The translations under genes and the position numbers were made by a program. A DNA stretch of 64,000 nucleotides from Hypanus sabinus (taxonomy: Eukaryota), in contig NC_082709.1 in NCBI RefSeq assembly GCF_030144855.1, forward strand, positions 128,774,001 to 128,838,000. The letters are read 5' to 3'. This document shows, one piece after another, positions 26,975 to 64,000 of this stretch (its first letter is position 1; each line of letters begins with the position of its first letter). The notes under the pieces were generated by a model, which was given only the letters and a program-made list of their open reading frames with translations, was not told the DNA's origin and searched no databases.

Positions 26975-27069
26975 GTGTTCACTTTGGCAGCACTTTTACT
27001 AAAACTGGAGAAGATTACCTTGGTCCCTGCACAAGGATGACATGCAAATATATGAAACATTGCATATTT
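26975..27069 (+). pseudogene. RNU6: U6 snRNA retro-pseudogene
   Basis: gtgttcactttggcagcac...caaggatgacatgcaaat...catattt; about 78/95 identity to U6 by manual alignment; 10-nt deletion removes most of the ACAGAGA box and the AGC triad is mutated. Confidence 0.9.
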
Positions 27070-27330
27070 AGGATGCTATGGCACCATAGCAGTTAGTGCA
27101 ACACTTTAAAGCATTGGCTGTATGATCGGAGTTCAGTTCCTGGCATAGTCTGCAAGGAGTTTGTGCATTCTCCCCACGACCATGTGGTTTCCTCTGGGTG
27201 CTCCAATTTTCTTCTAAACTCCAGAGACATACTGTTTAGGGTTAGTAAGTTGTGGGCATGCTATGTGACTCCAGAAGCTTGGTGACACTTGCAGGCTGCC
27301 CAGCACAATCCTTGCTGATTTGAGTTGATT
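27070..27330 (+). mobile_element. tRNA-derived V-SINE/HE1-like SINE directly abutting the U6 copy
   Basis: Degenerate A/B boxes, then the V-domain-like core gagtttgtgcattctcccc...ggtttcctctgggtgctcc; followed by a CR1 fragment at 27331-27445. Confidence 0.75.
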
Positions 27331-36586: not shown

Positions 36587-39500
36587 GCAATTCTGTGGAC
36601 ACAGGAAAGAAACATGGATGGTTATTTGCCTCCCAGGTGCCAGGGTCCGGAATGCTTCTGATCGTGTCCATGATATCTTGAGGTGGAAAGGTGAACAGCC
36701 AGATGTCCCGAAAGCAGACTACACAGAGTTAGGAAAGAAGCTGAGAAGCAGGACCACAACGGTAGTAACCTCGGGATTACTGCCTGTGCCACGTGACAGT
36801 GAGTATAGGAGTAGAGTTAGATGGAGGATAAACGTGTGGCTGAGGGATAGGAGCAAGGGACAGGGATTCAGATTTCTGGATCATTGAGAGCTCTTTTGGG
36901 GCAGGTATGACCTGCACAAAAAGGACGGGTTGCACTTGAATCCGAGAGGGCCAATATCCTGGCAGGGAGGTTTGCTAAGGCAATTGGGGAGAGTTTAAAC
37001 TAGAATGGCTGGGGGGTGGGAACCGCACTGAAGAGACGGAGGAAGGGGCGATTGGCACACAAATAGAGGAAGCTTGTAGGCAGTGTGGGAAGGAGGACAG
37101 GCAAGTGATAGAGACGAGATGCACTCGGACTGATGGTTTGAGATTTGTCTATTTTAATGCAAGGATGAGAGAGTGTGGATCAGTACTTGGAGCTATGATG
37201 TTGTGGCTATTACAGAGACTTGGATGGCTCAGGAGCAGGAATGGCTACTTCGAGTGCCAGTCTTTAGATGTTTCAGAAAGGACAGGGAGGGAGGCAAAAG
37301 AGGTGGGGGGGGGGGCGTAGCACTGCTGGTCAGAGATAGTGTCACGGCTGCAGAAAAGGAGGAAGTCATGGAGGGGTTGTCTATGGTGTCTCTGTAGGTG
37401 GAAGTTAGGAATAGGAAGGGATCAATAACTCTACTGGGTGTTTTTGTAGACCACCCAATAGTAACAGGGACATCTAGCGGCAGATAGGGAGACAGATTCT
37501 GGAGCGGTGCAATAATAACAGGGTTGTCGTGATGGGAGATTTTTATTTCCCCAGTGTTGATTGGCATCTCCTTAAAGCAACGGGTTTAGATTGGGTAGAG
37601 TTTGGTAGGTGTGTTCAGGAAGGTTTCCTGACACAATATGTAGACAAGCCTACAAGAGAAGAGGCTGTTCTTGATCTGGTATTGGGAAATGAACCTGGTC
37701 AGGTGTCAGGTCTCTCAGTGGGAGAGCATTTTGCATTTTGGAGACAGTGAACTTTATCTCCTTTACCATAGCGTTGGAGAGAGGTAGGAGCAGACAAGTC
37801 AGGAAAACGTTTAATTGAAGTAGGGAGAAATATGAAGCTATCAGGCAGGAACTTGGAAGCATAAATTGGGAGCAGACATTCTCAGGGAACATATGGCAGA
37901 AATGTGGTAAATATTCAGGGGATATTTGCGTGGCATTCTGCATAGGTACGTTCCAATCACACAGGGAATGGATGGTAGGGTAAAGGAACCATGGTGTACA
38001 AAGGCTATTGAAAATCTAGTCAAGAAGAAAAGAAAAGCTTACAAAAGGTTCAAAAAAACTAGGTAATGATAGAGATCTAGAAAATCATAAGGCTAGCAGG
38101 AAGGAGCTTAAGAATGAAATTATGAGAGCCAGTAAGGGCCATGAGAAGGCCTTGGTGAGCAGGATTAAGGAAAACCCCAAGGCATTCTACAAGTAGGTGA
38201 AGTGCAAGAGGATAAGATGTGAGAGAATAGAACCATTTAAGTGCAACAGTGGAAAAGTGTATGGAACCAGAGGAGGTAGTGGAGGTACATAATGAATACT
38301 TTGCTTCAGTATTCACTATGGAAAAGGACCTTGGCGAATGCAGGGCTGACTTATAGTGGACTGAAAAGCTTGAGCATATAGATATTAAGAAAGAGGATGT
38401 GCTGGGGCTTCTGGGAAGCATCAAGTTGGATAAGTCACTGGGACTGGATGAGATGTACCCCAGGCTACTGTGGGAGGTGAGGAAGGAGATTGCTGAGCCT
38501 CTGGCAATGATCTTTGCATCATCAATGGGGATGGAAGAGTTTCTGGAGGATTGAAGGGTTGCAAATGTTGATCCTTTTATTCAAGAAATGGAGCAGAGAT
38601 AGCCCAGGAAATTATAGACCAATAAGTCTTACTTCAGCATGGCTTCATCAAAGACTTTACGAGCCTGATTGAATTTTTTGAGGATGTGATTTAACACACT
38701 GATGAAGGTAGAGCTGTAGATGAAGGTAGATGTAGTGTATATGGATTTCAGCAAGGCATTTAATAAGGTACCCCATGCTAAGCTTATTGAGAAAGTAAGG
38801 AGGCATGGGATCTAAGGGGACCTTACTTAGTGGATCCAGAATTGGCTTGCACACAAAAGGCAATGTGTGGTTGTAGACAGGTCATATTTTGCATGGAGGT
38901 CAGTGACCAGTTGTGAGCCTCAGGGATCTGCTCTGGGACCCCTTCTCTTTGTGATTTTTATAAATGACTTGGATGAACAAGTGGAGGGATGGGTTTGTAA
39001 ATTTGCTGATGACACAAAGGTTGGGGGTGTTGTGGATAGTGTGGAGGGCTGTCGGAGGTTACAGTGGGACATCAATAGGATGCAAAACTGGGCTGAGAAG
39101 TGGCAGATGGAGTTCAACCCAGATAAGCGTGAGGCGATTCATTTTGGTAGATCAAATATGATGACAGAATATAGCATTAATGGTAAGACTCTTGGCAATG
39201 TGAAGGATCAGAGGAATCTTGGGGTCTAAGTCCATAGGACACCCAAAGCTGCTGCGCAGGTTGATTCTGTGGTTAAGAAAGCAGATGGTGCATTGGCCTT
39301 CATCAACCATGGGTTTGACTTCAAAAGCCGAGAGGTAATGTTACAGCTATATAGGACCCTGTTCAGACCACAGTTGGAGTACTGTGTTCAGTTCTGGTCA
39401 CCTCACTATAGGAAACTATAGAAATGGTGCAGAGAATATTTACAAGGATGTTGCCTTATGAGAATAGGTTGAGTGAACTTGGCCTTTCCTCCTTGGAGCA

Positions 39501-39909
39501 ATGGAGGATGAGAGATGACCTCATAGAGGTGTATAAGATGATGAGAGGCCTTGATACTGTGGATTATCACAGGCTTTTTCCCAGGACTGAAATGGCTGAC
39601 ATGAGAGCGCACAGTTTTAAAGTGCTTCAAAGTAGGTTGAGAGGAGATTTCAAGGGTAAGTTTTTTACGCAGAGTGTGGTGAGTGCATGGAATGGGCCTC
39701 CAGCAACGGTGGAGGCAGATACATTAGGGTCTTTTAAAAGATTCTTGGATAGGTACATGGTATTTAGAAAAAAAGAGGGCTCTTTTTCCTCGGTAATTTC
39801 TTGGTAATTAAAATGAAAACCCTCGGTAATTTCTAAAGTAGGTACATGCTCGGCACAGCATTGTGGGCCAAAGGGCCTGTATTGTGCTGTAGGTTTTCCG
39901 TGTTTCTTT
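36587..39909 (+). mobile_element. CR1 LINE, 5'-truncated: ORF1 esterase end plus ORF2 APE/RT, pseudogenised
   Basis: ICLPGARVRNASDR (CR1 ORF1 SGNH-like), YDVVAITETW and MGDFYFP (APE), PQGSALGPLLFVIFIND and KFADDTK (RT); many stops; 3' tail tgtgctgtaggttttc interrupted by LTR element 1. Confidence 0.92.
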
Positions 39910-41608
39910 TGTTACGTATCCCGTAACTGGATAACGTGCCAGCAAAGACAGAGAGGTCCGTTGAAGTCTGATGTCACTATTTTCAAACGTTTTTATTTAT
40001 AAAGGGACACAAAAGTAGGGTTAATACATACATTCAGATAGTGCACTTCGTCAACACTAAATCTAAAGCGCGGGTATAGTAATAATCATCATTAAGAAGT
40101 GAGCTCTACGGTTGTCTAGGGGTTAGTAGATTGTCCGTTGGGAATATAAAAGTCACTGAGAAGGCTGCAGGCCTCAGCCCTTTGAAAATCGCTGGGTTTT
40201 ACGTGGGGCGACAAAGAGAGAGAGAGATTGGGGGAGAAGAGGAAGAACTTGCCGAGTCTTGATGAGGCTTCCGTGAAATTGGGGGGGGTGGGGAGCGTTG
40301 GTTTCCTCTCCCCGATGTTAGTTAAAAGCGGTTTTCTGTGATTCCAGCCACAGATTCCAATCCCGGAATCTAACGCACGTGGCTTCCTTCAGAATGGCTT
40401 CCCGCTGCTGCGGGAACACTCTCTCGTGTCTTCTTGGTGCGTCTGAGGGGGCTGTCCCCCTGAGACTCTCCTTTATACTTCCTCATGGGGTCGCAGGTGT
40501 CAATCAGGTTGTGATGATGCAATCTCTCTCTCAACCAGCCCACCTTGCCCAAGGGCTTCTCACGTGGTCTCCATGAGACAATCGTCGCTGTCGTCTTATT
40601 CTGTATCCTGGGTGGGACGTGCAATTTGGCACATTTCTTTCTCTCTCTCTCCTACTGGGTCTACTGACCCCCCCCCCCCCTTCGACGGGTGCTGTTGCGA
40701 TTCTCACAAAGGAGGGGGCTGGGATCATAACACCTCCCCTCTTAAAACGTTTTTACCAGCGGTTAAAACGGAGTGGTCCACAGTCTTACAGGAGTTTTGA
40801 ATCTAACACAATACACAAGTTTTTCTTTTCACAGAATACTACCGTTATACATTCAAGTCAGTATCTAAATAGTTAACGATTACAGTGTCCCTTTCTTTAA
40901 TAACATTGCGAACCGTACATCAGACTTCAATTCAATAACCACCTATTTATTTTTTTTCTTAAGCAACAAAACTAAGGAGGTGTGACCTTAGCTTAGGTGC
41001 ATTTACAAAAGTTTACGCGAATACTAATCGTTTCAGTCATTTAACTTAACCGGCAGGTCTCCAAAGGGCTGCCTTTATTATTCACAGGCTTTGGCGCAAA
41101 CCCGTTCAACCTGCTTGGCTGTCTAACAATGGCATCTCCATTAACCGTCACCTCTTTTTCGGTGAGCCCCCCCGTGGGGAACTTGAGTAGTTTTGCGTAG
41201 TGAACTCCCGCCCGCCCCGTTCATCGGGGTTATTTTAGCAACACCATGCCCCAGACTTAAACCAACGCCACCCAATTCTTTGATTTCACCCAGGTGGCTG
41301 GCCCTTTTATCAGTCCCCTTCAGGCTATTGGTGTTTGATTCTAACTCTTCGCTCAAGTAGCATGTCGAAGGCGGCCTCTTCACACCCCATCCTGGCATAA
41401 CAATAGAGTGGGGGGCCCCGCTATTCCCCGGCTCACTCTGTGAGCGATCTGCCAGGTTTAAGGTTTCTTCCTTCGATTTGGAAACTACAGACTTTCCGTT
41501 TCCTTCACTAACAATCCTCACCCCCCCCATTCTTAAATTCTGCGTTAACTTTGAACCCACCTTCGAGTACAAACACCGGGGAACTCACACTTCCCCCGGT
41601 TACCAAGG

Positions 41609-43977
41609 TTAACCCTTTTCCCACTGAACCAAGTCTATCTGACCCACAAGGACGGCTGCCCCGTTCCACTGAATCAAATACCTCAGACTTCTTCTGAGCT
41701 CCGTTACCAGGTTCAGCACCTCGTGCATCCCCATCTCAGACACACTCAAACGGGACATTTGCCTCTTCCAGGCTTTCAACACCCGTACCTTTTTCAAATT
41801 TGAACTTCCCCTGATTCTCCCAGTTTCTCTCTGGGCAGCTCCCACCCGGGAAGGCGCAACCCTGCGAGCTGAAACAACCTCCTCGGCCCTTTCAGCAGAC
41901 TCCTTCGAGGCAAGGGTACCCTTTCCATCTCGGACTGCCCTCACCTCATTATTGGGAACACCTTTAGAACTCTCAAGTTCTTCAAACAATTCTGCCAAAC
42001 CAGACAGATCATCCATGTCCAACTCTGGACCTTTTAACAGCTTTATCTGTTTCTCATCTTTATTTCCTACCTTTAGGACCTTTCTCTTCGCTAAGGGCAG
42101 ATCTATCTCCTCTCCCTTACCCCCTTTCACTTTACTACTCTTCATCTTACCACCCTCTAAACCCTCATGGCACAGGGTTATCAAAGACGTCTCGGCCAAA
42201 TCAAAACTGGCCAGATTTAAACTGCTCTCGTTCTCAGCTGTCTCTCTCGACATGCTGCGAGTGACTGCGCCGGCAAGATGGTTCTTGTGCGCAAGGGGTG
42301 GGGCCACCACACTCGCCGGTCGCCAGGTTGGCAGCATGGCTGACCAAACCTTACCCCCTGCTAAGTCGTTCCCCAGCAGGATGTCCACGTCAGCTCTCAG
42401 GAATTCTGAGGGCACCCCTATTTCAACTGATCCATACACCAGCTCACAATCCAGAATGACCTTATATAAGGGCACCATTTCTATCAGTTTATTTATTCCT
42501 TCCACCTTTACCATGCCCGTTTCCCGACCAAATTCTAGTACCTTATGGCTAACCAGGGATAGTTCAGCTCCCGTGTCTCTCCAGATTCGTACGGGAACTG
42601 GTGTGTCTCCCTCCGTCACAGACATGGTTCCGTGTGACAGACAACTCCCAGAGCCTTCTTGTACTCTGTCTACCCTCGGCTCTCTGGTCGATTTGCTGAT
42701 TACCACGGCACACCTGATAGGGAGGGCGGCTTTCCCTCTTCCTATCTCCTTTCTCGGAGCAAAGCATCGAGATGCAATGTGCCCCTCCTTTCCACAATTA
42801 AAACAGGTCAAACCCGGAACCTTCTGGCCGTCATGCCTTTCCCCCTCAACCTTACCGCTAGCTCCCGGTGGGACCTGTGCCTCACTCGTTGGACTTTCTC
42901 CATCGTTCCCACGGTCTCTCTGGGGACCTTTATTTGAGGAAGTCTTTGTCTTGTGAGTTAGGACATATTCGTCCGCAAACCTAGCAAATTCTGACATGGA
43001 CTTATCCGGCTTCTCATTCAAATACATCCGGATCTCCTCCGGAAAACAACTTTTAAATTCCTCGATCAAAAGTAACTCCCTGAGACGCCCATAATCCTCG
43101 TCCACCCTTTCCGCGGTGCACCAACGGTCCAAGAGCACCCCCTTCTCATGGGCTAGCTCGGTATACGTTTGATTCCACCCTTTTCTTAAATTTCTAAACT
43201 TTTGTCTATAGGCCTCAGGTCCCAATTCATAAGTCCGGAGAATGGCCTTCTTTACCTCATCATAATTCTCCGCTCCTCCCTCCCCCAGGGACAACGCCGC
43301 ATATGCTCGTTGGGCTTTCCCCTTTAACACACTTTGTAACAACGCCACCCACTGCTCTTTTGGCTGCCTATGATTTACTGCCACCTTTTCAAAAAGCAAG
43401 AAATAACTATCGACATCTGTCTCCTCGAACGGGGGCACCAATCTCAACTCCCTACTAACATTAAACTGCTCCGCTTGGTCTAACCCTTGATCTCTTTGCT
43501 CATTCATCATCTTCTCAATTTCCCGGTCATGTTGCCTCTGTTTCTCTTTCTCGGCCCATTCCTTCTCTTTCTCGGCCCGTTCCCTCTCTTTCTCCTGCTT
43601 CTAGCTTCTTTAGGTGAATTTCATGCTGTCTTTGCCTTTCCCTCTCTCTCTCTTGCCTTTCCCTCTCTCTCTCAACCCTTTCTCTCTCTCTCTCAGCCGC
43701 TTCCAGCTCTTTTAACTTAATTTCACATTCCAACTTCAATTTCTCCACCTCTAACTGAACCGTCCCACTTGATGGTACCTTTTCAGGGATATCTCTCAAT
43801 ACCTCAGCTTCAAACACCTTCTTCCCAATGTAATACTGGGTTTCGTACCTCCCGCTTTTTCATGGACGACCTCACTTCTGTGAGGTTCAACCCCTTCGCT
43901 AAATTTAACAAGTCTGATTTGGTGGCCGCCTCTAGTGCCCCCACCTTCGGGTTTTCCATAAATTCACCCACGTCCAT
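41609..43977 (-). pseudogene. gag: Gag (coiled coil, SCAN-like capsid, CCHC knuckle) plus aspartic protease of copy 1; N-terminus frameshifted
   Basis: ATG at 43977; 633-aa ORF 41609-43510 contains YELGPEAYRQKFR...LRELLLIEEFK (SCAN-like), CFNCGKEGHIASRC, IWRDTGAELSL and ILLGNDL; no YxDD or integrase motifs recognised. Confidence 0.88.
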
Positions 43978-44067
43978 CTTTGCTGGTTTCCCGTCTGGCT
44001 ACCCGCATAACCAGATTCAAGTTTTGGACTACAAGCCTGATTCACTGGCCTCCCAATTTGGTGTCAG

Positions 44068-44088
44068 ATCCCGAGACGAGAAACCCCA
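44068..44088 (-). promoter_or_regulatory. Primer-binding site, degenerate tRNA-Pro type
   Basis: TGGGGTTTCTCGTCTCGGGAT 3 nt inside the 5' LTR, versus the canonical tRNA-Pro PBS TGGGGGCTCGTCCGGGAT. Confidence 0.75.
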
Positions 44089-44914
44089 AGTTGTTACGTA
44101 TCCCATAACTGGAGAACTTACCAGTAAAGATAGAGAGGTCCGTTGAAGTCTGATGTCACTATTTTCAAACGTTTTTATTTATAAAGGGGCACAAAAGTAA
44201 GATTAATACATACATTCAGATAGTGCACATCGTCAACACTCAATCTGAAGCGTGGGTATATTAATAATCATCATTAAGAAGTGAGCTCTACGGTTGTCTA
44301 GGGGTTAATAGATTGTCTGTTGGGAATATAAAAGTCACTCAGAAGTCTGCAGGCCTCAGCACTTTGAAAATCGCTGGGTTTCATGTGGGGCGACCGAGAG
44401 AGAGAGATTGGGGAGAAGAGAAAGAACTTGCCAAATCTTGATGAGGCTTCTGTGAAATCGAGGGGGAGCATTGGTTTCCTCTCCCCGATGTTAGTTAAAA
44501 GCAGTTTTCTGTGATTCCAGCCACAAATTCCAATCCCGGAATCTAACACAAGTGGCTTCCTTCAGAATGGCTTCCCGCTGCTGCGGGATCACTCTCTCGT
44601 GTCTTCTTGGTGCGTCTGAGGGGGCTGTCCCCCTGAGACTCTCCTTTATACTTCCTCACGGGGTCGCAGGTGTCAATCAGGTTGGGATGATGCAATCTCT
44701 CTCTCAACCAGCCCACCTTGCCCGAGGGCTTTTCAAGTGGTCTCCATGAGACAATAGTCACTGTCGTCTTATTCTGTATCCTGGGTGGGACGTGCAATTT
44801 GGCACATTTCTCTCTCTCTCTCTCTCTTACTGGGTCTACTGACCACCCCCCCCCCCCCTTCGACGGGTGCTCTTGCGATTCTCACAAAGGAGGGGGCTGG
44901 GATCATAACACTTT

Positions 44915-45470
44915 GTTTCTACTTCCTCTGGAGAATGAAGTCCTTTGAAGTATGCTGCCCTATTCCTTCCCATGTCCTGCCAGTCTGTTGTTGCCAGTAC
45001 AATCTTCTATGTGGTGGTGTGCTGGTGCAATGGCATCTATACAGGTGATGCCAACAGGATCAATAAACTGCTTAGAAAGGCTGGCTGTATTATAGGAGTC
45101 ATCCTGGACACACTGGAGGCTGTGGTAGAACAAAGGATGCTGTGGAAAATCCTGGCAATTCTGGACAATGTTTCTCACCCTCTGCATGCCACCTTGGCTG
45201 ACCAGAGGAGCACTTTCTGTAATAGACTAAGACAGTTGTGCTGCTTCAAAGAGCGTTATATGATGTCACTCTTACCCTCGACCATTAGGCTCTATAATGA
45301 GTCAACCTGTAGCTGAGGAAGTAATGACCTTGCCTGTTAAACTGTTTGTGGTAACTTATTTTTTTTATTTCTTTCTTGCTTCTCTTTTAATATTTATATA
45401 TTTCTACATCTGTGACTTGTATTGCTACTGTGATGCTGTAATTTACTTTGGTAGCAATAAAGTATCTTTC
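44915..45470 (+). mobile_element. Rex-Babar-type LINE, right half and 3' UTR (preceded by the last bases of the CR1 tail)
   Basis: ctacttcctctggagaatgaagtcctttg... is collinear with the 24930-25935 copy; ORF 44945-45316 (LEAVVEQRMLWKILAILDNVSHPLH). Confidence 0.85.
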
Positions 45471-47537
45471 TAGAGCAGTATATGGGACTGATTTTGGTGT
45501 GCACTGTCATCTGATATGAATTGTACCGTGCACCCTGCTGTGTCAATGGAGCTGCTTTCAAACATATTGCCATAACTTTCCAACAATGTTTTAAGGTCTG
45601 ACTGAAATTTCTTTGCTAATGTTGTCTGAGGAGTTTAATGTTGATTGCAGGCATTAAGAATGAAGGGATCATTGTTTTACCTGCCTCCTGATCAGTTGAA
45701 TCAGTTGAATTTTTCTTTTCATCAAGCAGAAAGGTTAAAAAATGCGACATAGGTGTCACCAGTAAGGAATAGGAAACATTGTTTTGTTATCTTGCAATGG
45801 TTTATGCCAACAGTTTTAAAAGCCAGTTCTGTCTGAAATTTACTCCGTTTAAAACATCTCACACAAGTAGCTCTTCTTGATTGTAAACAAAGGTAGAAAG
45901 TGAGCAATAATCGATGACAACAGTCAAGGTCAGCCCATGACTGCTGAAGAGTTACCATGGCTACTTGTTTCGAATAATTGAATGCCATTATGTTCAATTT
46001 TCTAGCACCAGTGATTCCAGTGTTTTCACGATCACAATTTGTTAACAATTCTGATTTCCTTTGAAAACTGGAACTCAAAAGCCTTGCTGATGCAGAAACA
46101 AGTTTTTAAATCGTCTTTGGTATATCTCGAGCTTTTTCTAAATTTAGTTTTTAATGTATGGAGGGTATAAGTCCTTGAGGTTTATTCTGCCCACCATTAT
46201 CACGATTATTACCCTTTGAGAATGTAGTGGGATCCTATCTCTGCTGTTTGCCCTTTTTGTTTAAACCTTTTCTGCCTCTGACTCTGCCTTTAAAGCACCA
46301 AAAATTTAATCTAAATGGGTTACAAATTGCTGACAATGAGAATATCAACAACACAAGACTAATCAATGAAAGTATATAAACAAATTAGATAAATAATTGG
46401 CTTCTGACCTCAAAATGGAACTCTATTTTGTATTCTTTGGATGCTGGTACTGTTTACCACAATCTTCGCTGATGGTATAAATCTTTTCTATCACATTGTC
46501 AGTTATCAAACGTCTTCTATTAGAACACCCAAATTCCAAATGACTTAGCAATTGAATGCATCTCCCATTGTACATTCTGCCCATTTGACCTACCCCCATC
46601 ATACATACTGGTCGCTCATTGTTCGTCATATTTGTGGATGAACCTTCAAAGACCAAACTTCAGAGCAATACCCAGTTGATTGATGAAGTCACCATTTTGC
46701 ATCTTGACAATATCTTTTCAAGGACATAATTAATTTCCCTGATTTTTCTCATAAGTATTCTGGAGTGGGATTCGCTTTGTGAGGTAAAATGTATATTTTA
46801 GGCATGAACTATCATATTCCACATTGTGTTCAAGGTGCATGTAGAATGAGACTGGAGTGGTTACAAACAGACGTAAAAGGAATGCACAAGGGTTTCCCTG
46901 AACCCAGTACCATTGTATAATTATGTAAAACCTCACTTTGCTCTACATTTGCATGGTAGTCTGTGAAAAACTCCAGCCTTTTGAATTCAGGTATTCTGAT
47001 TGATGAGAGTTAAGCAGAGGTAGCTGAGATAGCCACTTGATTTGTTCAATGATCCAAATTTAAAAGGATTTTTCTCATCCATATTCTATGATGGCTGTCA
47101 GACTGTGCAGTGATCCAGGATAAAAGTAGTGTGAACTCTGATTCAGTATTCAACTTTTATAGGTTGCCATCTATTTAGGGTAGGTTTGTGTTGTTTTCTT
47201 TCAGCTTTGTGCTCCTGTCAGAGATGTTTCAAAACACACAGGATTTTATTCATGAAAAGTGTTACTTATGTTTTGTTGTTTGTATTTTTCTAGAGTTGTT
47301 GTCATTCTCATTTCAATGAGAGATCCATCATTTAGGCTATGAGATTTTTGCACATCAGTGTACATACAAATAATGCGATCTTGCTTGTATGTCGAAGACA
47401 AGGTTTATGTTATCCCTTCGGCTACTCAGACAAGTAAATGTTGAGCAGTGCAAGAGTCACTTGTGGAATTTGCTTGGATTAACTCATGGGGGCAAAAAAC
47501 ATCATTGAATCAAAATGTTAGAACTTTTTGTGGATAG

Positions 47538-50500
47538 TGTTACGAATCCCGTAACTGGAGAACTTACCAGCAAAGATAGAGAGGTCCGTTGAAGTCTGAT
47601 GTCACTATTTTCAAACGTTTTTATTTATAAAGGGACACAAAAGTAGGGTTAATACATACATTCAGATAGTGTACATCGTCAACACTCAATCTAAAGCGCG
47701 GGTATAGTAATAATCATCATTAAGTGAGCTCTGCTGTTGTCAAGGGGTTAATAGATTGTCCGTTGGAAATATAAAAGTCACTCAGAAAGTCTGCAGGCCT
47801 CAGCCCCTTTGAAAATCGCTGGGTTTCACGTGGGGGGACCGAGAGAGAGAGATTGGGGGAGAAGAGAAAGAACTTGCCGAGTCTTGATGAAGCTTCCGTG
47901 AAATCGGGGGAGCGTTGATTTCCTCTCCCCGATGTTAGTTAAAAGCGGTTTTCTGTGATTCCAGCCACAAATTCCAATCCCGGAATCTAACGCACGTGGC
48001 TTCCTTCAGAATGGCTTCCCACTGCTGCGGGATCACTCTCTCATGTCTTCTTGGTGCGTCCGAGGGGGCTGTCCCCCTGAGACTCTCCTTTATACTTCCT
48101 CATGGGGTCGCAGGTGTCAATCAGGTTGGGATGATACAATCTCTCTCTCAACCAGCCCACCTTGCCTGAGGGCTTTTCATGTGATCTCCATGAGACAATA
48201 GTCATTGTCATCTTATTCTGTATCCTGGGTGGGACGTGCAATTTGGCACGTTTCTCTCTCTCTCTCACTTCCTGGGTCTACTGACCCCCCCCCCCCCCAA
48301 ACGGGTGCTCTTGCGATTCTCACAAAGGAGGGGGCTGGGATCATAACACCTCCCCTCTTAAAACGTTTTTACCAGCGGTTAAAACGGAGTGGTCCACAGT
48401 CTTACAGGGGTTTTGAATCTAACACAATGCACAAGTTTTTCTTTTCACCAAGTACTACATTCAAGTCAGTATCTAAATAGTTAACGATTACAGTGTCCCT
48501 TTCTTTAATATCTTAACATTGCGAACCGTACATCAGACTTCAATTCAATAACCACCTATTTATTTTTTTCTCTTAAGCAACAAAACTAAGGAGGTCTGAC
48601 CTTAGCTTAGGTGCATTTACAAAAGTTTATGCGAATACTAATCGTTTCAGTCGTTTAACTTAACCGGCAGGTCTCCAAAGGGCTGTCTTTATCATTCACA
48701 GGCTTTGGCGCAAACCCGTTCAACCTGCTTGGCTGTCTAACAATGGCATCTCCATTAACCGTCGCCTCTTTTTCGGCGAGCCCCCCCGTGGGGAACTTGA
48801 GTAGTTTTGCGTGGTGAACTCCCACCCGCCCCGTTCATCGGAGTTATTTTAGCAACACCATGCCCCAGACTTAGACCATCTCCACCCAATTCTTTGATTT
48901 CACCCAGGTGGCTGGCCCTTTTATCAGTCCCCTTCAGGCTATTGGTGTTTGATTCTAACTCTTCGCTCAAGTAGCATGTCGAAGGCGGCCTTTTCACACC
49001 CCATCCTGGCATAACAATAGAGTGGGGGGCCCCGCTATTCCCCGGCTCACTCTGTGAGCGATCTGCCAGGTTTAAGGTTTCTTCCTTCGATTTCGAAACT
49101 ACAGACTTTCCGTTTCCTTCACTAACAATCCTCATCCCCCCCCATTCTTAAATTCTGCGTTAACTTTGAACCCACCTTCGAGTACAAACACCGGGGAACT
49201 CACACTTCCCCGGTTACCAAGGTTAACCCTTTTCCCTCTGAACCAAGTCCAGCCGACCCACAAGGACAGCTGCCCCGTTCCACTGAATCAGATACCTCAG
49301 ACTTCTTCTGAGCTCCGTTACCAGGTTCAGCACCTCGGGCATCCCCATCTCGGACACACTCAAACGGGACATTGGCCTCCTCCAGGCTTTCAACACCCGT
49401 ACCTTTTTCAAACTCCCTAACTTTTTCTGATTCTCCCAGTTACTCTCTGGGCAGCTCCCACCCGGGGAAGGCACAACCCTGCGAGCTGAAACAACCTCCT
49501 CGGCCCTTTCAGCAGACTCCTTCGAGGCAAGGGTACCCTTTCCATCTAGGACTGCCCTCACCTCATTATCGGGAACACCTTTAGAACTCTCAAGTTCTTA
49601 AAACAATTCTGCCAAACCAGACAGATCATCCATGTCCAACTCTGGACCTTTTAACAGCTTTATCTGTTTCTCATCTTTATTTCCTACCTTTAGGACCTTT
49701 CTCTTCGCTAAAGGCAGATCTATCTCCTTTCCTTTACGCCCTTTTACTTTACTACTCTTCGTCTTACCACCCTCTAAACCCTCATGGCACAGGGTCAGCA
49801 AAGACATCTCGGCCAAATCAAAACTGGCCAGATTTAAATTGCTCTCGTTCACAGCTCTCTCTCTCGACAAGCTGCGAGTGACCACGCCGGCGAGATGGTC
49901 CTTGGGCGCTAGGGACGGGGCCACCTTACTCGCCGGTCGCCAGTTCAGCAGCATGGCTGACCAAACCTTACCCCCTGCTAAGTCGTTCCCCAGCAGGATG
50001 TCCACGTCAGCTCTTGGGAATTCTGAGGGCACCCCTATTTCAACTGATCTATACACCAGCTCACAATCCAGAATGACCTTATATAAGGGCACCATTTCTA
50101 TCCATTTATTTATTCCTTCCACCTTTACCATGCCCGTTTCCCGACCAAATTCTAGTACCTTACGGCTAACCAGGGATAGTTCAGCGCCCGTATCACTCCA
50201 GATTCGTACGGGAACTGGTATGTCTCCCTCCGTCACAGACACGGTTCCGTGTGACAGACAACGCTCAGAGCCTTCTCGTACTCTGTCTACTCTCGGCTCT
50301 CTGGTCGATTTGCTGATTACCACGGCACACCTGATAGGGACGGCGGCTTTCCCTCTTCCTATCTCCTTCCTTGGAGCAAAGCATCGAGATTCAATGTGCC
50401 CCTCCTTTCCACAATTAAAACAGGTGAAACCCGGAACCCTCTGGCCGTCTTGCCTTTCCCCCTCAACCTTACCGCTAGCTCCCCGTGGAACCTCTGCCTC

Positions 50501-51362
50501 ACTCGTCGGACTTTCTCCATCGTTCCCACGGTCTCTCTGGGGACCTTTATTCGAGGAAGTCTTTGTCTTGTGGGTTAGGACATATTCGTCCGCAAACCTA
50601 GCAAATTCTGACATGGACTTATCCAGTTTCTCATTCAAATACATCCGGATCTCCTCCAGAACACAACTTTTAAATTCCTCGATCAAAAGTAACTCCCTGA
50701 GACGCCCATAATCCTCGTCCACCCTTTCCGCGGTGCACCAACGGTCCAAGAGCACCCCCTTTTCATGGGCTAGCTCGGTATACGTTTGATTCCACCCTTT
50801 CCTTAAATTTCTAAACTTTTGTCTATAGGCCTCAGGTCCCAATTCGTAAATCCGGAGAATGGCCTTCTTTACCTCATCATAATTCTCCACTCCTCCCTCC
50901 TCCAGGGACAACGCCGCATATGCTCGTTGGGCTTTCCCCTTTAACACACTTTGTAACAATGCCACCCACTGCTCTTTTGGCCACTTCTGACTTACTGCCA
51001 CCTTTTCAAAAAGCAAGAAATAACTATCGACATCTGTCTCCTCGAACGGGGGCACCAATCTCAACTCCCTACTAACATTAAACCGCTCCGCTTGGTCTAA
51101 TCCTTGATCTCTTCGCTCGTTCCTCATCTTCTCAATTTCCCGGTCATGTTGCCTCTGTTTCTCTTTCTCATCCCGTTCCCTCTCTTTCTCGGCCCGTTCG
51201 CTCTCTTTCTCGGCCCGTTCCCTCTTTTTCTCGGCCCTTTCCCTCTCTTTCTTGGCCCGTTCCCTCTCTTTCTCTTCTGCTTCTAGCTTCTTTAGGTGAA
51301 TTTCATGCTGTCTTTGCCTTTCCCTCTCTCTCTCTTGCCTTTCCCTCTCTCTCTCAACCCTT

Positions 51363-51399
<37 letters not shown>

Positions 51400-52615
51400 C
51401 GCTTCCAGCTCTTTTAACTTAATTTCACGTTCCAACTTTAATTTCTCCACCTCTAACTGAACCGTCCCACTTGATGATACTTTGTGAGGGATATCTTCCA
51501 ATACCTCATCTTCAAACACATTCTTCTTAACATAATACTGAGCTATGGCCCTTCGTACCTCCCGCTTTTTCATGGACGACCTCACTTCTGTGAGGTTCAA
51601 CCCCTTCGCTAAATTTAACAAGTCTGATTTTGTGGCAGCCTCTAGCGCCCCCACCGTCGGGTTTTCCATAAATTCACCAACGTCCATCTTTGCTGGTTTC
51701 TCGTCTGGCTACCCGCGTAACCAGATTCAAGGTTTTGATTTACAAGCCCGATTCACTGGCCTCCCAATTTGGTGTCAAATCCCGAGACGAGAACCCCAAC
51801 TGCTACGAATCCCATAACTGGAGAACTTACCAGCAAAGATAGAGAGGTCCTTTGAAGTCTGATGTCACTATTTTCAAACGTTTTTATTGATAAAGGGACA
51901 CAAAAGTAGGGTTAATACATACATTCAGATAGTGTACATCGTCAACACTCAATCTGAAGCGTGGGTATAGTAATACTCATCATTAAGTGAGCTCTGCTGT
52001 TGTCAAGGGGTTAATACATTGTCCGTTGGAAATATAAAAGTCACTCAGAAAGTCTGCCGGCCTCAGCCCCTTTGAAAATCGCTGGGTTTCACGTGGGGGG
52101 ACTGAGAGAGAGAGATTGGGGGAGAAGAGAAAGAACTTGCCGAGTCTTGATGAAGCTTCCGTGAAATCGGGGGAGCGTTGGTTTCCTCTCCCTGATGTTA
52201 GTTAAAAGTGGTTTTCTGTGATTCCAGCCACAAATTCCAATCCCGGAATCTAACGCACGTGGCTTCCTTCAGAATGGCTTCCCGCTGCTGCGGGAACACT
52301 CTCACGTGTCTTCTTGGTGCGTCTGAGGGGGCTGTCCCCCTGAGACTCTCCTTTATACTTCCTCATGGGGTCGCAGGTGTCAATCAGGTTGGGATGATGC
52401 AATCTCTCTCTCAACCAGCCCACTTTGCACGAGGGCTTTTCATGTGATCTCCATGAGACAATAGTCGCTGTCGTCTTATTCTGTATCCCGGGTGGGACGT
52501 GCAATTTGGCACGTTTCGTTCTCCCTCTCACTTCCTGGGTCTAATGACCCCCCCCCCCCGCCCCTCAACGGGTGCTCTTGCGATTCTCACAAAGGAGGGG
52601 GCTGGGATCATAACA
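47538..52615 (-). mobile_element. LTR retroelement copy 2 (same gag-protease-only family)
   Basis: LTRs 47538-48348 and 51801-52615; 4-bp TSD atag; PBS 51779-51798; PPT 48349-48359. Confidence 0.95.
49598..51687 (-). pseudogene. gag: Gag-protease of copy 2; one frameshift in a (GA)n tract and a premature TAA
   Basis: ORFs 51292-51687 and 49598-51127 join across the microsatellite at ~51366-51396; same SCAN-like, CCHC and DTG motifs; stop at 49598-49600 is GAA in copy 1. Confidence 0.88.
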
Positions 52616-52849
52616 ATAGAAACCCATTAGCATGTTCAAGAAAGTTATAGGGTATGTGAGCATCATACAGAATCCTGTGCAGTGACCAGTTTCAAAATGA
52701 AAGGTTGGCTTCTTATACTGCTTTCCAAGATCACTAACATTCATTGAAATAGGCCCATTGAGTCTTCTCCTTCATTCAAATTGATTACAGCCAATCCTTT
52801 ATCACAGTACCATATTCTCACTCAACTCCTCATAGCTCTTGGTGTCTTC

Positions 52850-55260: not shown

Positions 55261-55630
55261 GAATTCCCAGAGCTAATAACAAAACCTGCTGCACCCTGTT
55301 TTTTTTTGTAGGAGTTCCCTTTTGTTTTTCCAGGTTCTCTTTCTCCAATGCATCTATTTTGATGAATCCATCTTCCACACCAGTGCATCCTTGTGTATAT
55401 TCTTTTTGATTATTTTAAACTGCAGATTCCCTGAACTCTGACTGACTCTTCAACCAATGTCATTTCCTGTGCATCTCCACATCTCCCAGAAAAAGGAAAG
55501 AATTTTTCTTGACCACACCTTTCTCGGTTGAGACCTTTCAGCTGCACAAGACATTAGACAGGCCATATGTTCTGGTCACTACACTGTAGAAAGGATGGAG
55601 CAGAGCTAGAAAGAATGGAGAAGTTATTAC

Positions 55631-57318
55631 CACTACCAAGCACATCTTTCCCTCTCCCCCCTTTCTGCTTTCCGCAGGGATCACTCCCTACGCAACTCCC
55701 TTGTCCGTTCATCCCCCCCATCCCTTCCCACCGATCTCCCTCCTGGCACTTATCCTTGCAAGTGGAACAAGTGCTACACCTGCCCTTACACCCTCCCTCA
55801 CCACCATTCAGGTCCTTCCAGGTGAGGCGACACTTCACCTGTGAGTTGGCTGGTGTGGTATACTGCGTCCGGTGCTCCCGGTGTGGCCTTTTATATATTG
55901 GTGAGACCCGACGCAGACTGGGAGACCGTTTCGCTGAACACCTACGCTCTGTCCACCAGAGAAAGCAGGATCTCCCAGTGGCCACACATTTTAATTCCAC
56001 GTCCCATTCCCATTCTGATATGTTTATCCATGGCCTCCTCTACTGTTAAGATGAAGCCACACTCAGTTTGGAGGAACAACACCTTATATACCGGCTGGGT
56101 AGCCTCCAGCCTGATGGCATGAACATTGACTTCTCTACCTTCTGTTAATGCCCCTCCTCCCCTTCTTACCCCATCCCTGACATATTTAGCTGTTTGCCTG
56201 TTCTCCATCTCCCTCTGGTGCTCCCCCCCCCCACCCTTTCTTTCTCCTGAGGCCTCCCTGTCCCATGATCCTTTCCCTTCTCTAGCTCTGTATCCCTTTT
56301 GCCAATCACCTGTCTGGCTCTCAGCTTCACTCCACCCCCTCCAGTCTCCTATTGTTATGAAAGTACCACAGCTCTGAGGGGCCGAAGGGTGCGGGGTAGC
56401 CCCCTCCTTTGTGAGAATCGCAAGATCACTATTGATTTGGGTCAGGAGACCCAGGAAATGAGAGAGAGACGTGCGGAATGTCTTGTTCCCCCAGCAATAT
56501 AAAGCTAAGGGAAACAACCATTGTCTCTTGGAGACGAACTTGTGTATTGCAATACTGTGCTACGTGGAAGCCCTCAGGCAAAGTGGGCTGGTTGAGGGAG
56601 GGATTGCATCAACCCAACCTGATTGACATCTGAGACCCTGTGAGTCAGGGTAAAAGAGGGTCTGTGGGAACAGCCCCTCAGACACACCAGAAGAAATGCT
56701 AGCGATCCCGTAATAGCGGAAGCCGGTGGGGAGGCCACGTGCGTTCGGTTCCATTTGCCCCAGAACCGGTGCCCTTACCACGGAAAAACGGCTTTTAGCT
56801 ATCAACGGGGAAACCAACTCCCAACGACTCGAAGGATTGGCATCATAAAAGAACTGGGCAAGTTTTAACCTGTCTTTCTCTCAAACCCAAAATGCTGCAG
56901 CTTGAACCAACTAACAGTGACTTTTATATTTCCATCCAACAATACATTATCCCCTAGACAACGATAGAGCTATTTCTTATTGATTATTATTATACCCACG
57001 CTTTTAGATTTACTGTTGACGACGTATATTATCTGTATGTTTGCATTGATCTTATTTTTGTGTATCTTTATCAATAAATACTGTTAAAAATAGTACCATC
57101 AGACTTCAACGGACCTCTCTGTCTTTGCTGGTAAGTGACCCAGTTACGAGGTTCATAACACTATCATTTCACATTTTCCCCTCCCTCTCCTACTATCAAA
57201 TCTCTTACTATCTTTCCTTTCAGTTAGTCCTGACGAAGGGTCTCGGCCCGTAATGTCGACAGCACTTCTCCCTGTAAATGCTGCCTGGCCTGCTGCGTTC
57301 CACCAGCATTTTGTGTGT
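55631..57318 (+). mobile_element. Penelope-like element 3' part (GIY-YIG endonuclease plus tail), inside a CR1 fragment and interrupted by a solo LTR
   Basis: FTCELAGVVYCVRCSRCGLLYIGETRRRLGDRFAEH...PVATHFN (PLE GIY-YIG); hammerhead-like motif ~57225-57262; CR1 sequence stops at ~55630 and resumes at ~57319 (caccaggatattgcctgga). Confidence 0.88.
56353..57160 (+). mobile_element. Solo LTR related to the LTRs of copies 1 and 2 (different subfamily)
   Basis: TGTTA...TAACA; 4-bp TSD ctat; 3' part catcagacttcaacggacctctct is the reverse complement of the copy 1/2 LTR sequence; AATAAA at 57073-57078. Confidence 0.92.
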
Positions 57319-62624: not shown

Positions 62625-64000
62625 TTTCTTTTTTTTTCAATCTTTTTATTGAATTTCATATATATAAAAAAACATAACATAATAATGAATAGGTTATAAA
62701 TGCATTAGACTTGAAATTGAATTAATAATAGGATAACAATATCCTATTAAAATATCAACAGGAAAACATAGTACGTTATCAATCAAGCCTATAATAATTA
62801 TATGAAAAAAAATAAGAATAATCATCAAAAGAAAAAGAAAAAATTGTAAAAATACAAGCAAAAAATATATATTGAGAAAAAAAATGCTAAACTAAACTAA
62901 CAATGGGCAATAATAACAGTTTATTTGTATATGATAGTGCCAAAAACTCCGGAACTCCATACCAGAACAAGAATAAACAGAGAAAAGGTCTGGGAGAGGT
63001 CAAGTTAATTCATATGAAAATGTCGAATGAACGGTCCCCAAGTTTCTTCAAATTTAACTGATGAGTCAGAAATAGTGCTTCTAATTTTTTCCAAGCTCAG
63101 ATAAGAAATAGTTTGAGAGAGCCACTGAAATGTGGTAGGAGGATTAACCTCTTTTAAATTTTGCAATATAGACCTTCTGGCCATTAATGTTACAAAAGCA
63201 ATCATTCGTCTAATTGAAGGGGAAAATTGATTACCATCCTCATTTGGTATACCAAAAATTGCAGTAATAAAATGAGGTTGTAAATCGATATTCCAAATTG
63301 AGGAAATGGTTGCAAATATGTCCTTCCAATAATTATATAAGGTGGGACATGACCAAAACATATGGGTCAATGAAGCCACATCTGAATGACATCTGTCACA
63401 TTGAGGGTTAATATGACAGTTGAATCGAGCAAGTTTATCTTTAGACATATGAGCTCTATGTACAATTTTAAATTGTATTAAAGCATGTTTAGCACATATA
63501 GAAGAAGAATTAACCATTTGTAAAATTTTTTCCCATTTTTCTATTGATATATTATATTGAATTTCTTTTTCCCATTCTTGTTTTATTCTACCTGATATTT
63601 CTGGTTGTATCTTCATAATCATTTTATAAATAAAAGCCACTAATCCCTTCTGATAGGGATTTAAAGTAAAAATCATACCTAAAAAGTCCATTGAAGTTGA
63701 GTTGGGGAAGGATAGTAGAACTTTATGTAAAACATTTCTGATTTGTAGATATCTAAAAAAGTTAGATTTAGGTAATTCAAATTTGTTGGAAAGTTGGTCG
63801 AAAGGCATCAATCTACCTTCAAAAAAGAGATCACGAAAACATTTTATACCTTTCCTTTTCCATATGCTAAAAGCTTGATCTGTCAAAGAAGGTTTGAAAA
63901 AAAAAATTAAGTAAGATAGGGCTATCAAGAGCAAAGTTTTTCAGAGTAAAAAATTTACGAAATTGAAACCAAATTCGTAATGTATGTTTGACAACAGGGT
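62625..64000 (-). mobile_element. L1-clade LINE 3' end (ORF2 C-terminus with CCHC zinc-binding domain), running off the window
   Basis: 309-aa ORF 63005-63934 with FFRYLQIR, QFKIVHR, CDRC...LTHMFWSCP; AATAAA and poly(A) tail at 62625-62650 on the minus strand. Confidence 0.88.

What the first reader, a model, noticed from the sequence alone, without database searches (positions are those of the whole stretch)
39910..52615. A mobile gag-protease-only LTR retroelement family (TR-GAG-like) in a vertebrate
Seen: two ~5.0 kb elements, each with paired LTRs, PBS, PPT and its own TSD (CTTT, ATAG), with element-specific LTR variants (taagaagtgagctctacgg in both LTRs of copy 1, taagtgagctctgctg in both LTRs of copy 2). 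They are therefore independent insertions, not a segmental duplication. Both encode SCAN-like Gag, a CCHC knuckle and a DTG protease, and both lack RT, RNase H and integrase with the same internal structure. Established: Gmr1-like Gypsy elements carry SCAN-homologous capsids and normally encode pol; gag-only non-autonomous elements (TR-GAG) are described mainly in plants. Inference: the pol-less form transposed as a family, keeping its own capsid and protease while borrowing RT/IN in trans. It could be a parasite of an autonomous partner or a source of domesticable SCAN/capsid genes.
Basis: partly seen in the sequence, partly recalled or inferred. Interest (0 to 1): 0.72.

Follow-up and report, generated by a model that had tools for sequence, protein, structure and literature searches.

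The report
Pol-less Gmr1-like retrotransposon copies, stingray-type
Two old, now-broken copies of a stingray "jumping gene" family keep their own capsid and protease genes but have lost the enzymes needed to copy and insert themselves, so they must have spread using another element's enzymes; this type is well known in plants but I found no description of it in this vertebrate lineage.

Summary
Two LTR elements of 5.0 and 5.1 kb lie on the minus strand. Each has TG…CA LTRs, its own 4-bp target-site duplication (CTTT, ATAG), a TGG-start PBS-like site and a polypurine tract. LTR site patterns show two independent integrations. Both encode a SCAN-type capsid, a CCHC knuckle and a DTGA protease with a confident retropepsin fold. 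No RT, RNase H or integrase core is detectable. At least 19 gene models in two stingray genera, plus one uninterrupted 904-aa ORF, share the same junction after the protease, so this is a real pol-less family.

Three corrections apply:
- The elements are not "gag-protease only". The original ORF was about 900–950 aa. After about 30 aa of integrase N-terminus it continues into a roughly 290-aa degenerate second capsid-end/protease-like module that lacks the catalytic Asp.
- Both window copies are dead (frameshifts, one stop, LTRs 4–6% diverged).
- No autonomous partner was found. The nearest integrase-bearing relative is only 51% identical, so use of another element's enzymes remains an inference.

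I rate it a new variant of a known kind, of moderate interest.

The parts
44092..44910 (-). Copy 1, 5' LTR (819 bp, TG...CA; TATA-like motif at 44643-44650, AATAAA at 44174-44179)
44067..44088 (-). Copy 1, PBS-like site (starts with TGG, 3 nt after the 5' LTR); primer tRNA not identified
43601..43977 (-). Copy 1, Gag N-terminal domain (starts MDVGEF at 43977) and ER/EK-rich coiled-coil repeat; the reading frame changes near 43840 and within about 43600-43700
42950..43219 (-). Copy 1, capsid C-terminal domain matching Pfam SCAN (E 1.6e-11)
42764..42805 (-). Copy 1, CCHC zinc knuckle (nucleocapsid)
42359..42643 (-). Copy 1, retropepsin-fold protease (DTGA at 42566-42577, LLGND at 42365-42379)
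42008..42100 (-). Copy 1, junction: a ~30-aa stub (LPLAKRK...) homologous to the start of the integrase N-terminal extension of Gmr1-like polyproteins; all further integrase, RT and RNase H are absent
41144..42007 (-). Copy 1, module 2: degenerate second capsid-end / linker / protease-like segment without the catalytic Asp, ending HRKRGDG-stop at 41144; split over three frames (changes near 41860 and 41540)
40733..40743 (-). Copy 1, polypurine tract AAGAGGGGAGG abutting the 3' LTR
39910..40732 (-). Copy 1, 3' LTR (823 bp); TSD CTTT at 39906-39909 and 44911-44914
51801..52615 (-). Copy 2, 5' LTR (815 bp); TSD ATAG at 47534-47537 and 52616-52619
51778..51798 (-). Copy 2, PBS-like site (starts with TGG, 2 nt after the 5' LTR)
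49625..51687 (-). Copy 2, Gag (N-terminal domain, coiled coil, SCAN 50567-50836, CCHC 50381-50422), protease (DTGA 50183-50194, LLGND 49982-49996) and integrase stub (49625-49717); the frame changes inside the repeat region (about 51160-51400)
48758..49624 (-). Copy 2, module 2 (degenerate capsid-end / protease-like tail); in-frame stop at 49598-49600 and frame changes near 49416, 49220 and 49140
48349..48359 (-). Copy 2, polypurine tract AAGAGGGGAGG
47538..48348 (-). Copy 2, 3' LTR (811 bp)
56353..57160 (+). Solo LTR of a related but distinct family (~70% identity overall, 79% over the last 140 nt), TG...CA ends, TSD CTAT (56349-56352 and 57161-57164), no PBS after it

Best explanation
These are two old, independently integrated and now defective copies of a non-autonomous Gmr1-like LTR retrotransposon family. 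Gmr1-like elements are Ty3/mdg4-related and have a SCAN-type capsid. This family is found in dasyatid stingrays.

Shown here:
- Each copy has complete cis signals for reverse transcription and integration: LTRs with TG...CA ends, a TGG-start PBS-like site, a polypurine tract and a 4-bp TSD.
- Each copy carries one formerly continuous ORF of about 900-950 aa.
- That ORF encodes, in order: an N-terminal domain, a coiled coil, a capsid (SCAN), a CCHC nucleocapsid, a retropepsin protease, a linker, about 30 aa of the integrase N-terminal extension, and a degenerate second 'capsid-end / linker / protease-like' module that has lost the catalytic Asp.
- The integrase core, RT and RNase H are absent.
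- The same junction occurs in many loci of two stingray genera, so the pol-less form itself was copied repeatedly.

Inferred:
- Its RNA was packaged and reverse-transcribed in particles built at least partly from its own Gag, processed by its own protease.
- RT, RNase H and integrase were supplied by an autonomous Gmr1-like element that recognises the same PBS and LTR ends.
- The composite ORF arose by template switching or recombination during reverse transcription. This removed IN-RT-RH and joined on a second Gag-PR segment.
- It is unresolved whether that segment came from another lineage or from an old internal duplication.
For: Independent insertions:
- The TSDs CTTT and ATAG are exact.
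- 14 sites and 4 indel events group the LTRs by element, against 3 and 3 sites for the alternatives.
- LTR K2P distance is 0.058 within copy 1 and 0.041 within copy 2, and 0.058-0.069 between copies.
- The copies are collinear over their whole length.

No pol:
- Pfam at E<=10 on 20 sense-strand pieces gives only SCAN and zf-CCHC.
- tblastn of the full-length Gmr1-like polyproteins P0210 and P0223 and the IN-bearing P0016 matches the window only through Gag-PR.

Gmr1-like identity:
- Pfam SCAN hit, E 1.6e-11.
- P0016 has the same Gag-PR, then LPLARR, then an integrase zinc finger.
- The PR-IN-RT/RH order is confirmed on P0210, P0223 and P0225 and in bioRxiv 10.1101/2025.03.03.638093.

Protease:
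- D33, G35, G101 and D103 are invariant in 121 relatives.
- pLDDT is 85-95 over residues 11-105.
- All top PDB fold hits are retropepsins.

Family:
- 20 protein models carry a contiguous PR-to-tail junction: 12 from Hypanus sabinus, 7 from Hemitrygon akajei and 1 from ENA.
- The 19 stingray models each sit on a different chromosome or scaffold.
- P0010 is one uninterrupted 904-aa ORF with the same layout.

Module 2:
- The tail HMM hits the capsid end and the protease N-terminal half collinearly in 40 of 229 non-family proteins at >=12 bits. The best of 762 shuffles is 7.6 bits.
- The Mobula Gag P0182 hits each window copy twice.
Against: - No autonomous partner was identified. The closest IN-bearing relative (P0016) is only 51% identical in Gag-PR, and its gene model has no RT.
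LTRs, TSDs and PBS of other family members are therefore unseen. The copy census rests on gene models, which may be spliced or corrected.
- The primer tRNA for the PBS is unidentified, and there is no tRNA gene in the window.
- dN/dS between the two window copies is 0.57 (binomial p 0.03), only weak evidence of constraint.
- hhalign statistics for module 2 against the family's own Gag-PR are not significant, although the alignment is collinear (E 0.38).
Confidence: 0.8

Rival explanations
1. One pol-deleted element was copied at the DNA level (tandem or segmental duplication), so there is no transposing pol-less family.
For: The two copies lie only 2.6 kb apart in the same orientation. Divergence between copies (about 6%) is close to divergence between the two LTRs within a copy (4-6%).
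Against: - The TSDs and flanking sequences differ.
- 14 sites and 4 indels are shared by both LTRs of one copy but not the other. Only 3 sites show the left-with-left, right-with-right pattern that a duplication predicts.
- The same junction is present in at least 19 loci on different chromosomes in two genera.
Confidence: 0.03
2. The pol-less genomes are not a self-propagating lineage. They are produced again and again from an autonomous parent by the same template-switch deletion, like defective genomes of retroviruses.
For: Template switching is the likely origin of the junction. No separate partner was identified, so a close parent cannot be excluded.
Against: - Family members with the same junction differ by 25-45% at the protein level across subfamilies and genera. 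The nearest IN-bearing relative is 49% different.
- The junction and the composite tail are therefore old and inherited through many replication cycles.
- The two window copies come from sources that differed by about 1.7% and already shared the structure.
Confidence: 0.07
3. The stingray proteins are a host gene family domesticated from Gag-PR (like PEG10/RTL or SCAN-domain genes), and the window copies are pseudogenes of it.
For: NCBI annotates many intact ORFs as 'uncharacterized protein LOC...'. The tail keeps its reading frame and stop position across diverged members.
Against: - The window copies carry full retrotransposon signals: paired LTRs, TSD, PBS-like site and PPT.
- The copies are dispersed over many chromosomes.
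- Both window copies are decaying.
- A few individual loci could still be co-opted; this was not tested.
Confidence: 0.05
4. Pol is present but too degenerate to detect, which would make the copies ordinary decayed autonomous elements.
For: The first ~30-60 tail residues align with the integrase N-terminal extension.
Against: - The internal region is only about 3.35 kb, whereas IN-RT-RH needs about 3 kb on its own.
- There are no Pfam hits at E<=10 and no tblastn hits from pol of three relatives.
- hhalign of the tail against integrase finds nothing beyond residue ~60.
- The rest of the tail is instead homologous to capsid-end and protease segments.
Confidence: 0.02

Closest known systems
Gmr1-like LTR retrotransposons (Ty3/mdg4-related; source of the vertebrate SCAN domain)
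   Same: - The capsid C-terminal domain matches Pfam SCAN, followed by a CCHC knuckle and a DTG protease.
- The protease is followed directly by the integrase N-terminal extension, the unusual PR-IN-RT/RH order.
- The Gag N-terminal 'MDVxxF' domain is shared with many relatives.
   Different: - The integrase core, RT and RNase H are missing.
- A second degenerate capsid-end/protease-like module takes their place.
Plant GAG/PROT-only non-autonomous LTR retrotransposons and TR-GAG elements (Coffea, Arabidopsis, sugar beet; PMC13570524)
   Same: - LTRs, PBS and PPT are kept.
- The ORF is limited to structural protein(s), with or without protease, and there is no RT or IN.
- The elements amplified as families and are presumed to use another element's enzymes.
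   Different: - This is an animal (cartilaginous fish) host and a different lineage (Gmr1-like).
- The element is 5 kb and keeps an enzyme, so it is not TR-GAG in the strict sense.
- It carries an extra degenerate Gag-PR module.
Wheat RLG_Quinta (non-autonomous) / RLG_Cereba (autonomous) pair (PMC11302176)
   Same: The non-autonomous member encodes GAG plus an extra domain of unknown function and lacks RT and INT. It is thought to contribute Gag while using the partner's enzymes.
   Different: - There the partner is identified by identical PBS and LTR termini. Here no partner is known.
- Here the extra domain can be traced to capsid-end/protease sequence.
Non-autonomous LTR elements described in animals (TRIMs in ants and Echinococcus; PMC3532108, PMC4558846)
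   Same: They are LTR elements in animals that are described as non-autonomous (titles and abstracts listed).
   Different: Those are miniature elements (TRIMs). This family keeps a long Gag-PR ORF.

Membership tests
LTR retrotransposon (structural definition) | Paired direct LTRs with TG...CA termini | tested here: met
   Four LTRs of 811-823 bp, all TG...CA.
LTR retrotransposon (structural definition) | Target-site duplication flanking each element | tested here: met
   CTTT/CTTT and ATAG/ATAG for the two copies; CTAT/CTAT for the solo LTR.
LTR retrotransposon (structural definition) | Primer-binding site complementary to a tRNA 3' end, next to the 5' LTR | tested here: inconclusive
   A TGG-start 21-22 nt site lies 1-3 nt after the 5' LTR in both copies. 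No tRNA gene is in the window, so complementarity could not be tested.
LTR retrotransposon (structural definition) | Polypurine tract abutting the 3' LTR | tested here: met
   AAGAGGGGAGG lies directly before the TG of the 3' LTR in both copies.
Gmr1-like lineage | Capsid C-terminal domain homologous to SCAN | tested here: met
   Pfam SCAN at 44.3 bits (cut-off 27) in copy 1 and 39.2 bits in copy 2.
Gmr1-like lineage | Integrase placed between protease and RT (PR-IN-RT/RH order) | tested here: inconclusive
   The protease linker is followed by ~30 aa homologous to the integrase N-terminal extension, as in P0016 and the full-length relatives. The rest of IN and all of RT are absent, so the order itself cannot be seen in these copies.
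Gmr1-like lineage | Placement in the Gmr1 clade by RT phylogeny | not testable with these tools
   The elements have no RT. Assignment rests on Gag-PR homology to proteins with the Gmr1-like domain order.
TR-GAG (strict sense) | Retains a GAG ORF | tested here: met
TR-GAG (strict sense) | Lacks all enzymes | tested here: not met
   A retropepsin-fold protease with intact DTGA and LLGND motifs is present. The definition used is the one quoted in PMC13570524.
Non-autonomous, gag-retaining LTR family (GAG/PROT class) | No RT, RNase H or integrase core | tested here: met
Non-autonomous, gag-retaining LTR family (GAG/PROT class) | Several independent copies share the same deleted structure | tested here: met
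   Two independent insertions in the window, 19 stingray gene models and one ENA ORF with the same junction. Other copies were checked at protein level only.
Non-autonomous, gag-retaining LTR family (GAG/PROT class) | An autonomous partner with matching LTR termini, PBS and PPT | not testable with these tools
Protein searches found only P0016 as an IN-bearing stingray relative.
Retropepsin (aspartic protease family A2) | D-T/S-G active-site triad and downstream hhGxD motif on a retropepsin fold | tested here: met
   The motifs are invariant columns in 121 relatives. The model has pLDDT 85-95. Foldseek top hits are HIV, SIV, EIAV, M-PMV, HTLV and foamy virus proteases and DDI1/2. Pfam models miss this protease even in full-length relatives. 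Catalytic activity was not tested.
Domesticated SCAN / Gag-derived host gene | LTR-free locus maintained by the host | tested here: not met
   The window copies have LTRs, TSDs, a PBS-like site and a PPT, and both are decaying.

The most novel reading that the evidence does not exclude
The pol-less lineage may be more than a stripped-down parasite. It could be a long-lived 'double capsid-protease' element whose second, catalytically dead Gag-PR-like module is a functional, selected protein part, for example one that modulates particle assembly or protease activation. On this reading the lineage outnumbers its autonomous helper in stingray genomes. It would be an animal counterpart of the plant Quinta/Cereba type of partnership and a standing pool of SCAN-type capsid genes in cartilaginous fishes.
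Probability: 0.25. Interest if true: 0.6.

Novelty: new variant of a known kind. Interest (0 to 1): 0.45.

Why it matters
Non-autonomous LTR retrotransposons that keep gag, with or without protease, are well documented in plants. In the papers I searched I found none described for animals, and a review notes that non-autonomous LTR types are not prominent in animal genomes. This family shows that a vertebrate Gmr1-like lineage took the same route and persisted across at least two stingray genera.

It offers a natural system for asking what a helper-dependent element gains by keeping its own capsid and protease. It also shows how composite ORFs arise by recombination during reverse transcription.

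In practical terms, these ORFs are currently annotated as dozens of 'uncharacterized protein' genes in ray genomes, some fused to host genes. They should be recognised as transposon-derived.

Tried and rejected
- Pfam does not detect the protease, but it also misses it in full-length Gmr1-like polyproteins. That negative result is therefore uninformative.
- phmmer of the protease region against PDB sequences found nothing. The family profile found only nucleocapsid knuckles.
- AlphaFold of the 817-aa relative P0001 with a 16-row alignment was too poor to use (mean pLDDT 29).
- I tested the idea that the tail is a degenerate integrase and rejected it. hhalign aligns only residues 1-60, at E 0.36.
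- hhalign of module 2 against the family's own Gag-PR gave a collinear but non-significant alignment (E 0.38). Significance came instead from HMMER scores against shuffled controls.
- A word search with the linker region of P0182 found no other relative, so a donor lineage for module 2 could not be established.
- No tRNA gene is in the window, so the PBS could not be matched to a primer. From memory alone it resembles a tRNA-Pro-type PBS; this was not tested.
- dN/dS between the two window copies is only weakly informative, because most of the differences arose after insertion.
- No contig that I took for human was met.
The consensus lines that the alignment tools print were not used.

Full report
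**1. What is there**

The region holds two LTR elements on the minus strand.
- Copy 1 runs 39910-44910 (5001 bp), with its 3' LTR at 39910-40732 and its 5' LTR at 44092-44910.
- Copy 2 runs 47538-52615 (5078 bp), with its 3' LTR at 47538-48348 and its 5' LTR at 51801-52615.
- All four LTRs begin TG and end CA.
- Each element is flanked by its own exact 4-bp duplication: CTTT for copy 1 and ATAG for copy 2.
- On the sense strand, a TGG-start PBS-like site follows the 5' LTR after 1-3 nt.
- The purine run AAGAGGGGAGG abuts the 3' LTR in both copies.
- Each LTR carries a TATA-like motif near sense position 260 and an AATAAA near position 730. These are motif matches only.

**2. Independent insertions, not a DNA duplication**

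- In a four-way LTR alignment, 14 substitution sites and 4 indel events are shared by the two LTRs of one element and differ from the other element.
- Only 3 sites support each of the two alternative groupings.
- K2P distance is 0.058 between the LTRs of copy 1, 0.041 for copy 2, and 0.058-0.069 between elements.
- This fits two integrations from source copies that differed by about 1.7% (14 of ~810 sites), followed by roughly equal decay.
- The two elements are collinear over their whole length at about 92% identity. Their shared internal structure therefore predates both insertions.
- The insertions are old. No substitution rate for rays was available to me, so I give no date.

**3. Coding content**

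- Pfam finds SCAN (E 1.6e-11 and 6e-10) and zf-CCHC in the main ORF of both copies.
- The protease claim was tested separately, because Pfam reports no aspartic-protease model even in bona fide full-length relatives.
  - In an alignment of the region with 120 relatives, the only invariant columns are D33 and G35 (the DTG triad) and G101 and D103 (LLGND).
  - AlphaFold2 with that alignment gives pLDDT 85-95 over residues 11-105.
  - Foldseek against the PDB returns only retroviral proteases (HIV-1/2, SIV, EIAV, M-PMV, HTLV-1, foamy virus PR-RT) and the DDI1/DDI2 retropepsin-like domain at the top.
  - The protease is therefore real in fold and motifs. Activity is untested.

**4. Absence of pol**

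- I scanned 20 stop-to-stop sense-strand pieces of the two internal regions against Pfam at E<=10. Only SCAN and zf-CCHC were found.
- I then ran tblastn with two full-length Gmr1-like polyproteins against the whole 64-kb window. These were P0210 (1585 aa) and P0223 (1551 aa); both have SCAN, Integrase_H2C2, rve, SH3, RVT_1 and RT_RNaseH, and P0210 also zf-CCHC. I did the same with the integrase-bearing Hypanus protein P0016.
- Only the Gag-PR parts of these proteins match.
- The only RVT_1 hit near the elements lies at 38867-39229 on the plus strand. It is outside copy 1's LTR and sits next to an APE endonuclease fragment, so it belongs to a non-LTR LINE.

**5. Lineage and the junction**

- The closest relatives are stingray proteins: Hemitrygon akajei and Hypanus sabinus at up to 74% identity over 87% of the query and up to 92% over shorter stretches, followed by Mobula.
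- P0016 from Hypanus sabinus has the same Gag-PR at 51% identity. After 'LPLARR' it runs straight into the integrase zinc finger and core.
- This is the PR-IN-RT/RH order that defines Gmr1-like elements. I confirmed it on three full-length polyproteins, and it is stated in bioRxiv 10.1101/2025.03.03.638093.
- The window elements keep the linker and about 30 aa of the integrase N-terminal extension (LPLAKRK..., 42008-42100 in copy 1). They then depart from integrase.
- A profile comparison of the tail with integrase finds nothing beyond about 60 residues.

**6.

- The stingray proteins P0001, P0002 and P0007 continue for about 340 aa past the junction and end '...RKRGEG'. In both window copies the same sequence continues in other reading frames, down to 41144 in copy 1 and 48758 in copy 2.
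- The original ORF therefore had about 900-950 aa, not 633.
- I built an HMM from this tail and scored it against Gmr1-type proteins outside the family. It gives two collinear matches:
  - profile positions 17-62 match the last helices of the SCAN/capsid domain and the 'LDEK..L..AA.LADE.VLTHK' motif;
  - positions ~117-183 match the N-terminal half of the protease.
- In the tail the 'RIWRDTGA' segment is gapped or replaced, so the catalytic Asp is gone.
- 40 of 229 non-family proteins score >=12 bits, against a maximum of 7.6 bits in 762 composition-matched shuffles. An earlier, narrower test gave 7 real segments at >=10 bits against none of 2940 shuffles.
- In the window itself, the Mobula hypostoma Gag P0182 hits each element twice by tblastn: once in the true capsid and once in the tail (41601-41846 in copy 1, 49418-49627 in copy 2).
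- The family's own first modules score only about 5 bits against the tail profile, while P0182 scores 82 bits. A recent self-duplication is therefore unlikely.
- P0182's linker has no other detectable relative. Whether module 2 came from a second lineage by recombination or from an old internal duplication stays open.

**7. Is it a family?**

- Among the best 120 hits, 20 protein models carry the contiguous protease-to-tail junction. Twelve are from Hypanus sabinus, seven from Hemitrygon akajei and one from an ENA contig. The 19 stingray models each lie on a different chromosome or scaffold.
- P0010, from a 3.6-kb ENA contig, is one uninterrupted 904-aa ORF. It has the N-terminal domain, Gag, PR, junction and tail, and is 47-55% identical to the window copies.
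- Members differ by 25-45% in protein sequence yet keep the same junction, reading frame and stop position. This argues that the composite ORF was maintained while the lineage was active. It is an inference from protein models, some of which may be spliced or corrected.
- Mobula proteins keep a longer piece of the integrase N-terminal extension and then also lack any pol domain. I did not resolve what they are.

**8. State of the two window copies**

Both are defective.
- Copy 1 changes reading frame near 43840, within about 43600-43700, near 41860 and near 41540.
- Copy 2 changes frame within about 51160-51400 and near 49416, 49220 and 49140. It also has an in-frame stop at 49598-49600.
- dN/dS between the copies over 551 aligned codons is 0.57 (26 synonymous and 52 non-synonymous differences; binomial p 0.03). 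This is what one expects if a minority of the differences arose under constraint before insertion and the rest arose neutrally afterwards.

**9. The partner question**

- In the annotated proteomes, P0016 is the only stingray model among the best 120 integrase hits.
- The all-length search found long Gmr1-like polyproteins only at 34-40% identity.
- A helper element is thus plausible, since an IN-bearing relative exists in Hypanus. But no close, complete partner is documented.
- A solo LTR of a related family lies 3.7 kb from copy 2 (56353-57160, TSD CTAT). It shares the LTR termini and 79% of the last 140 nt, but only about 49% of a middle stretch. Such a pattern would be expected if end signals are shared between related families. 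Whether this LTR family belongs to an autonomous element is unknown.

**10. Comparison with what is known, and verdict**

- Gag-retaining non-autonomous LTR elements are well described in plants:
  - TR-GAG elements;
  - the GAG/PROT-only families, 28 of 115 families in sugar beet (PMC13570524);
  - wheat RLG_Quinta, which encodes GAG plus a domain of unknown function and is mobilised by RLG_Cereba (PMC11302176).
- A review notes that non-autonomous LTR types are not prominent in animal genomes (PMC5718144).
- My searches found no description of a pol-less Gmr1-like family.
- The finding is therefore a new variant of a known kind. It works like the plant GAG/PROT-only elements. It is a member of the Gmr1-like lineage by Gag-PR homology. 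It fails the strict TR-GAG definition because it keeps a protease.
- The distinctive feature is the composite ORF with a second, catalytically dead capsid-protease-like module.
- Interest is moderate (0.45): solid and tidy, useful for annotating ray genomes and for studying helper-dependent retroelements, but not a surprise to a specialist.

Noticed in passing
window 56353-57160 (+): Solo LTR of a related but distinct family, about 70% identical to the LTRs of the two elements. It has TG...CA ends and TSD CTAT on both sides, with no PBS after it. Its U5 end is far better conserved (79%) than its middle (about 49%).
   Followed up: yes
window 26975-27071 (+): Full-length match to the U6 spliceosomal RNA model (63 bits, gathering score 44). 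It could be a gene or a retropseudogene; this was not examined.
   Followed up: no
window 37173-39229 (+): Fragments of a non-LTR LINE lie directly beside copy 1 on the opposite strand: Exo_endo_phos at 37173-37397 and RVT_1 at 38867-39229. This RT is not part of the LTR element. The strong positive GC skew at 36-40 kb coincides with it.
   Followed up: partly
window 55567-56049 (+) and 63005-63934 (-): More transposon debris: an ORF with a weak GIY-YIG hit (20 bits, below the cut-off) and a 309-aa ORF with a zf-RVT hit (26.2 bits, just below the 27.5 cut-off). The whole neighbourhood is rich in transposable elements.
   Followed up: partly
window 43484-43694 and 51101-51376 (-): An ER/EK-rich tandem repeat in the Gag coiled-coil region differs between the two copies by 20-nt and 65-nt length changes.
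   Followed up: partly
proteins P0017, P0029, P0033, P0043 (stingray and Mobula gene models): Several public gene models fuse pieces of this retroelement ORF to host gene names (abtb1, MACC1, phosphatidylserine decarboxylase, GPN-loop GTPase 1). These are probably annotation chimeras.
   Followed up: no
proteins P0023, P0025, P0026, P0027, P0029 (Mobula): The Mobula relatives keep Gag-PR and a longer piece of the integrase N-terminal extension. They then diverge without any integrase core or RT domain, so they may be a second, independently truncated family.
   Followed up: partly
(annotated stingray proteomes): At least 19 pol-less models but only one integrase-bearing relative (P0016) appear among the top hits. 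The non-autonomous form may outnumber any helper, or annotation bias may explain the ratio.
   Followed up: partly
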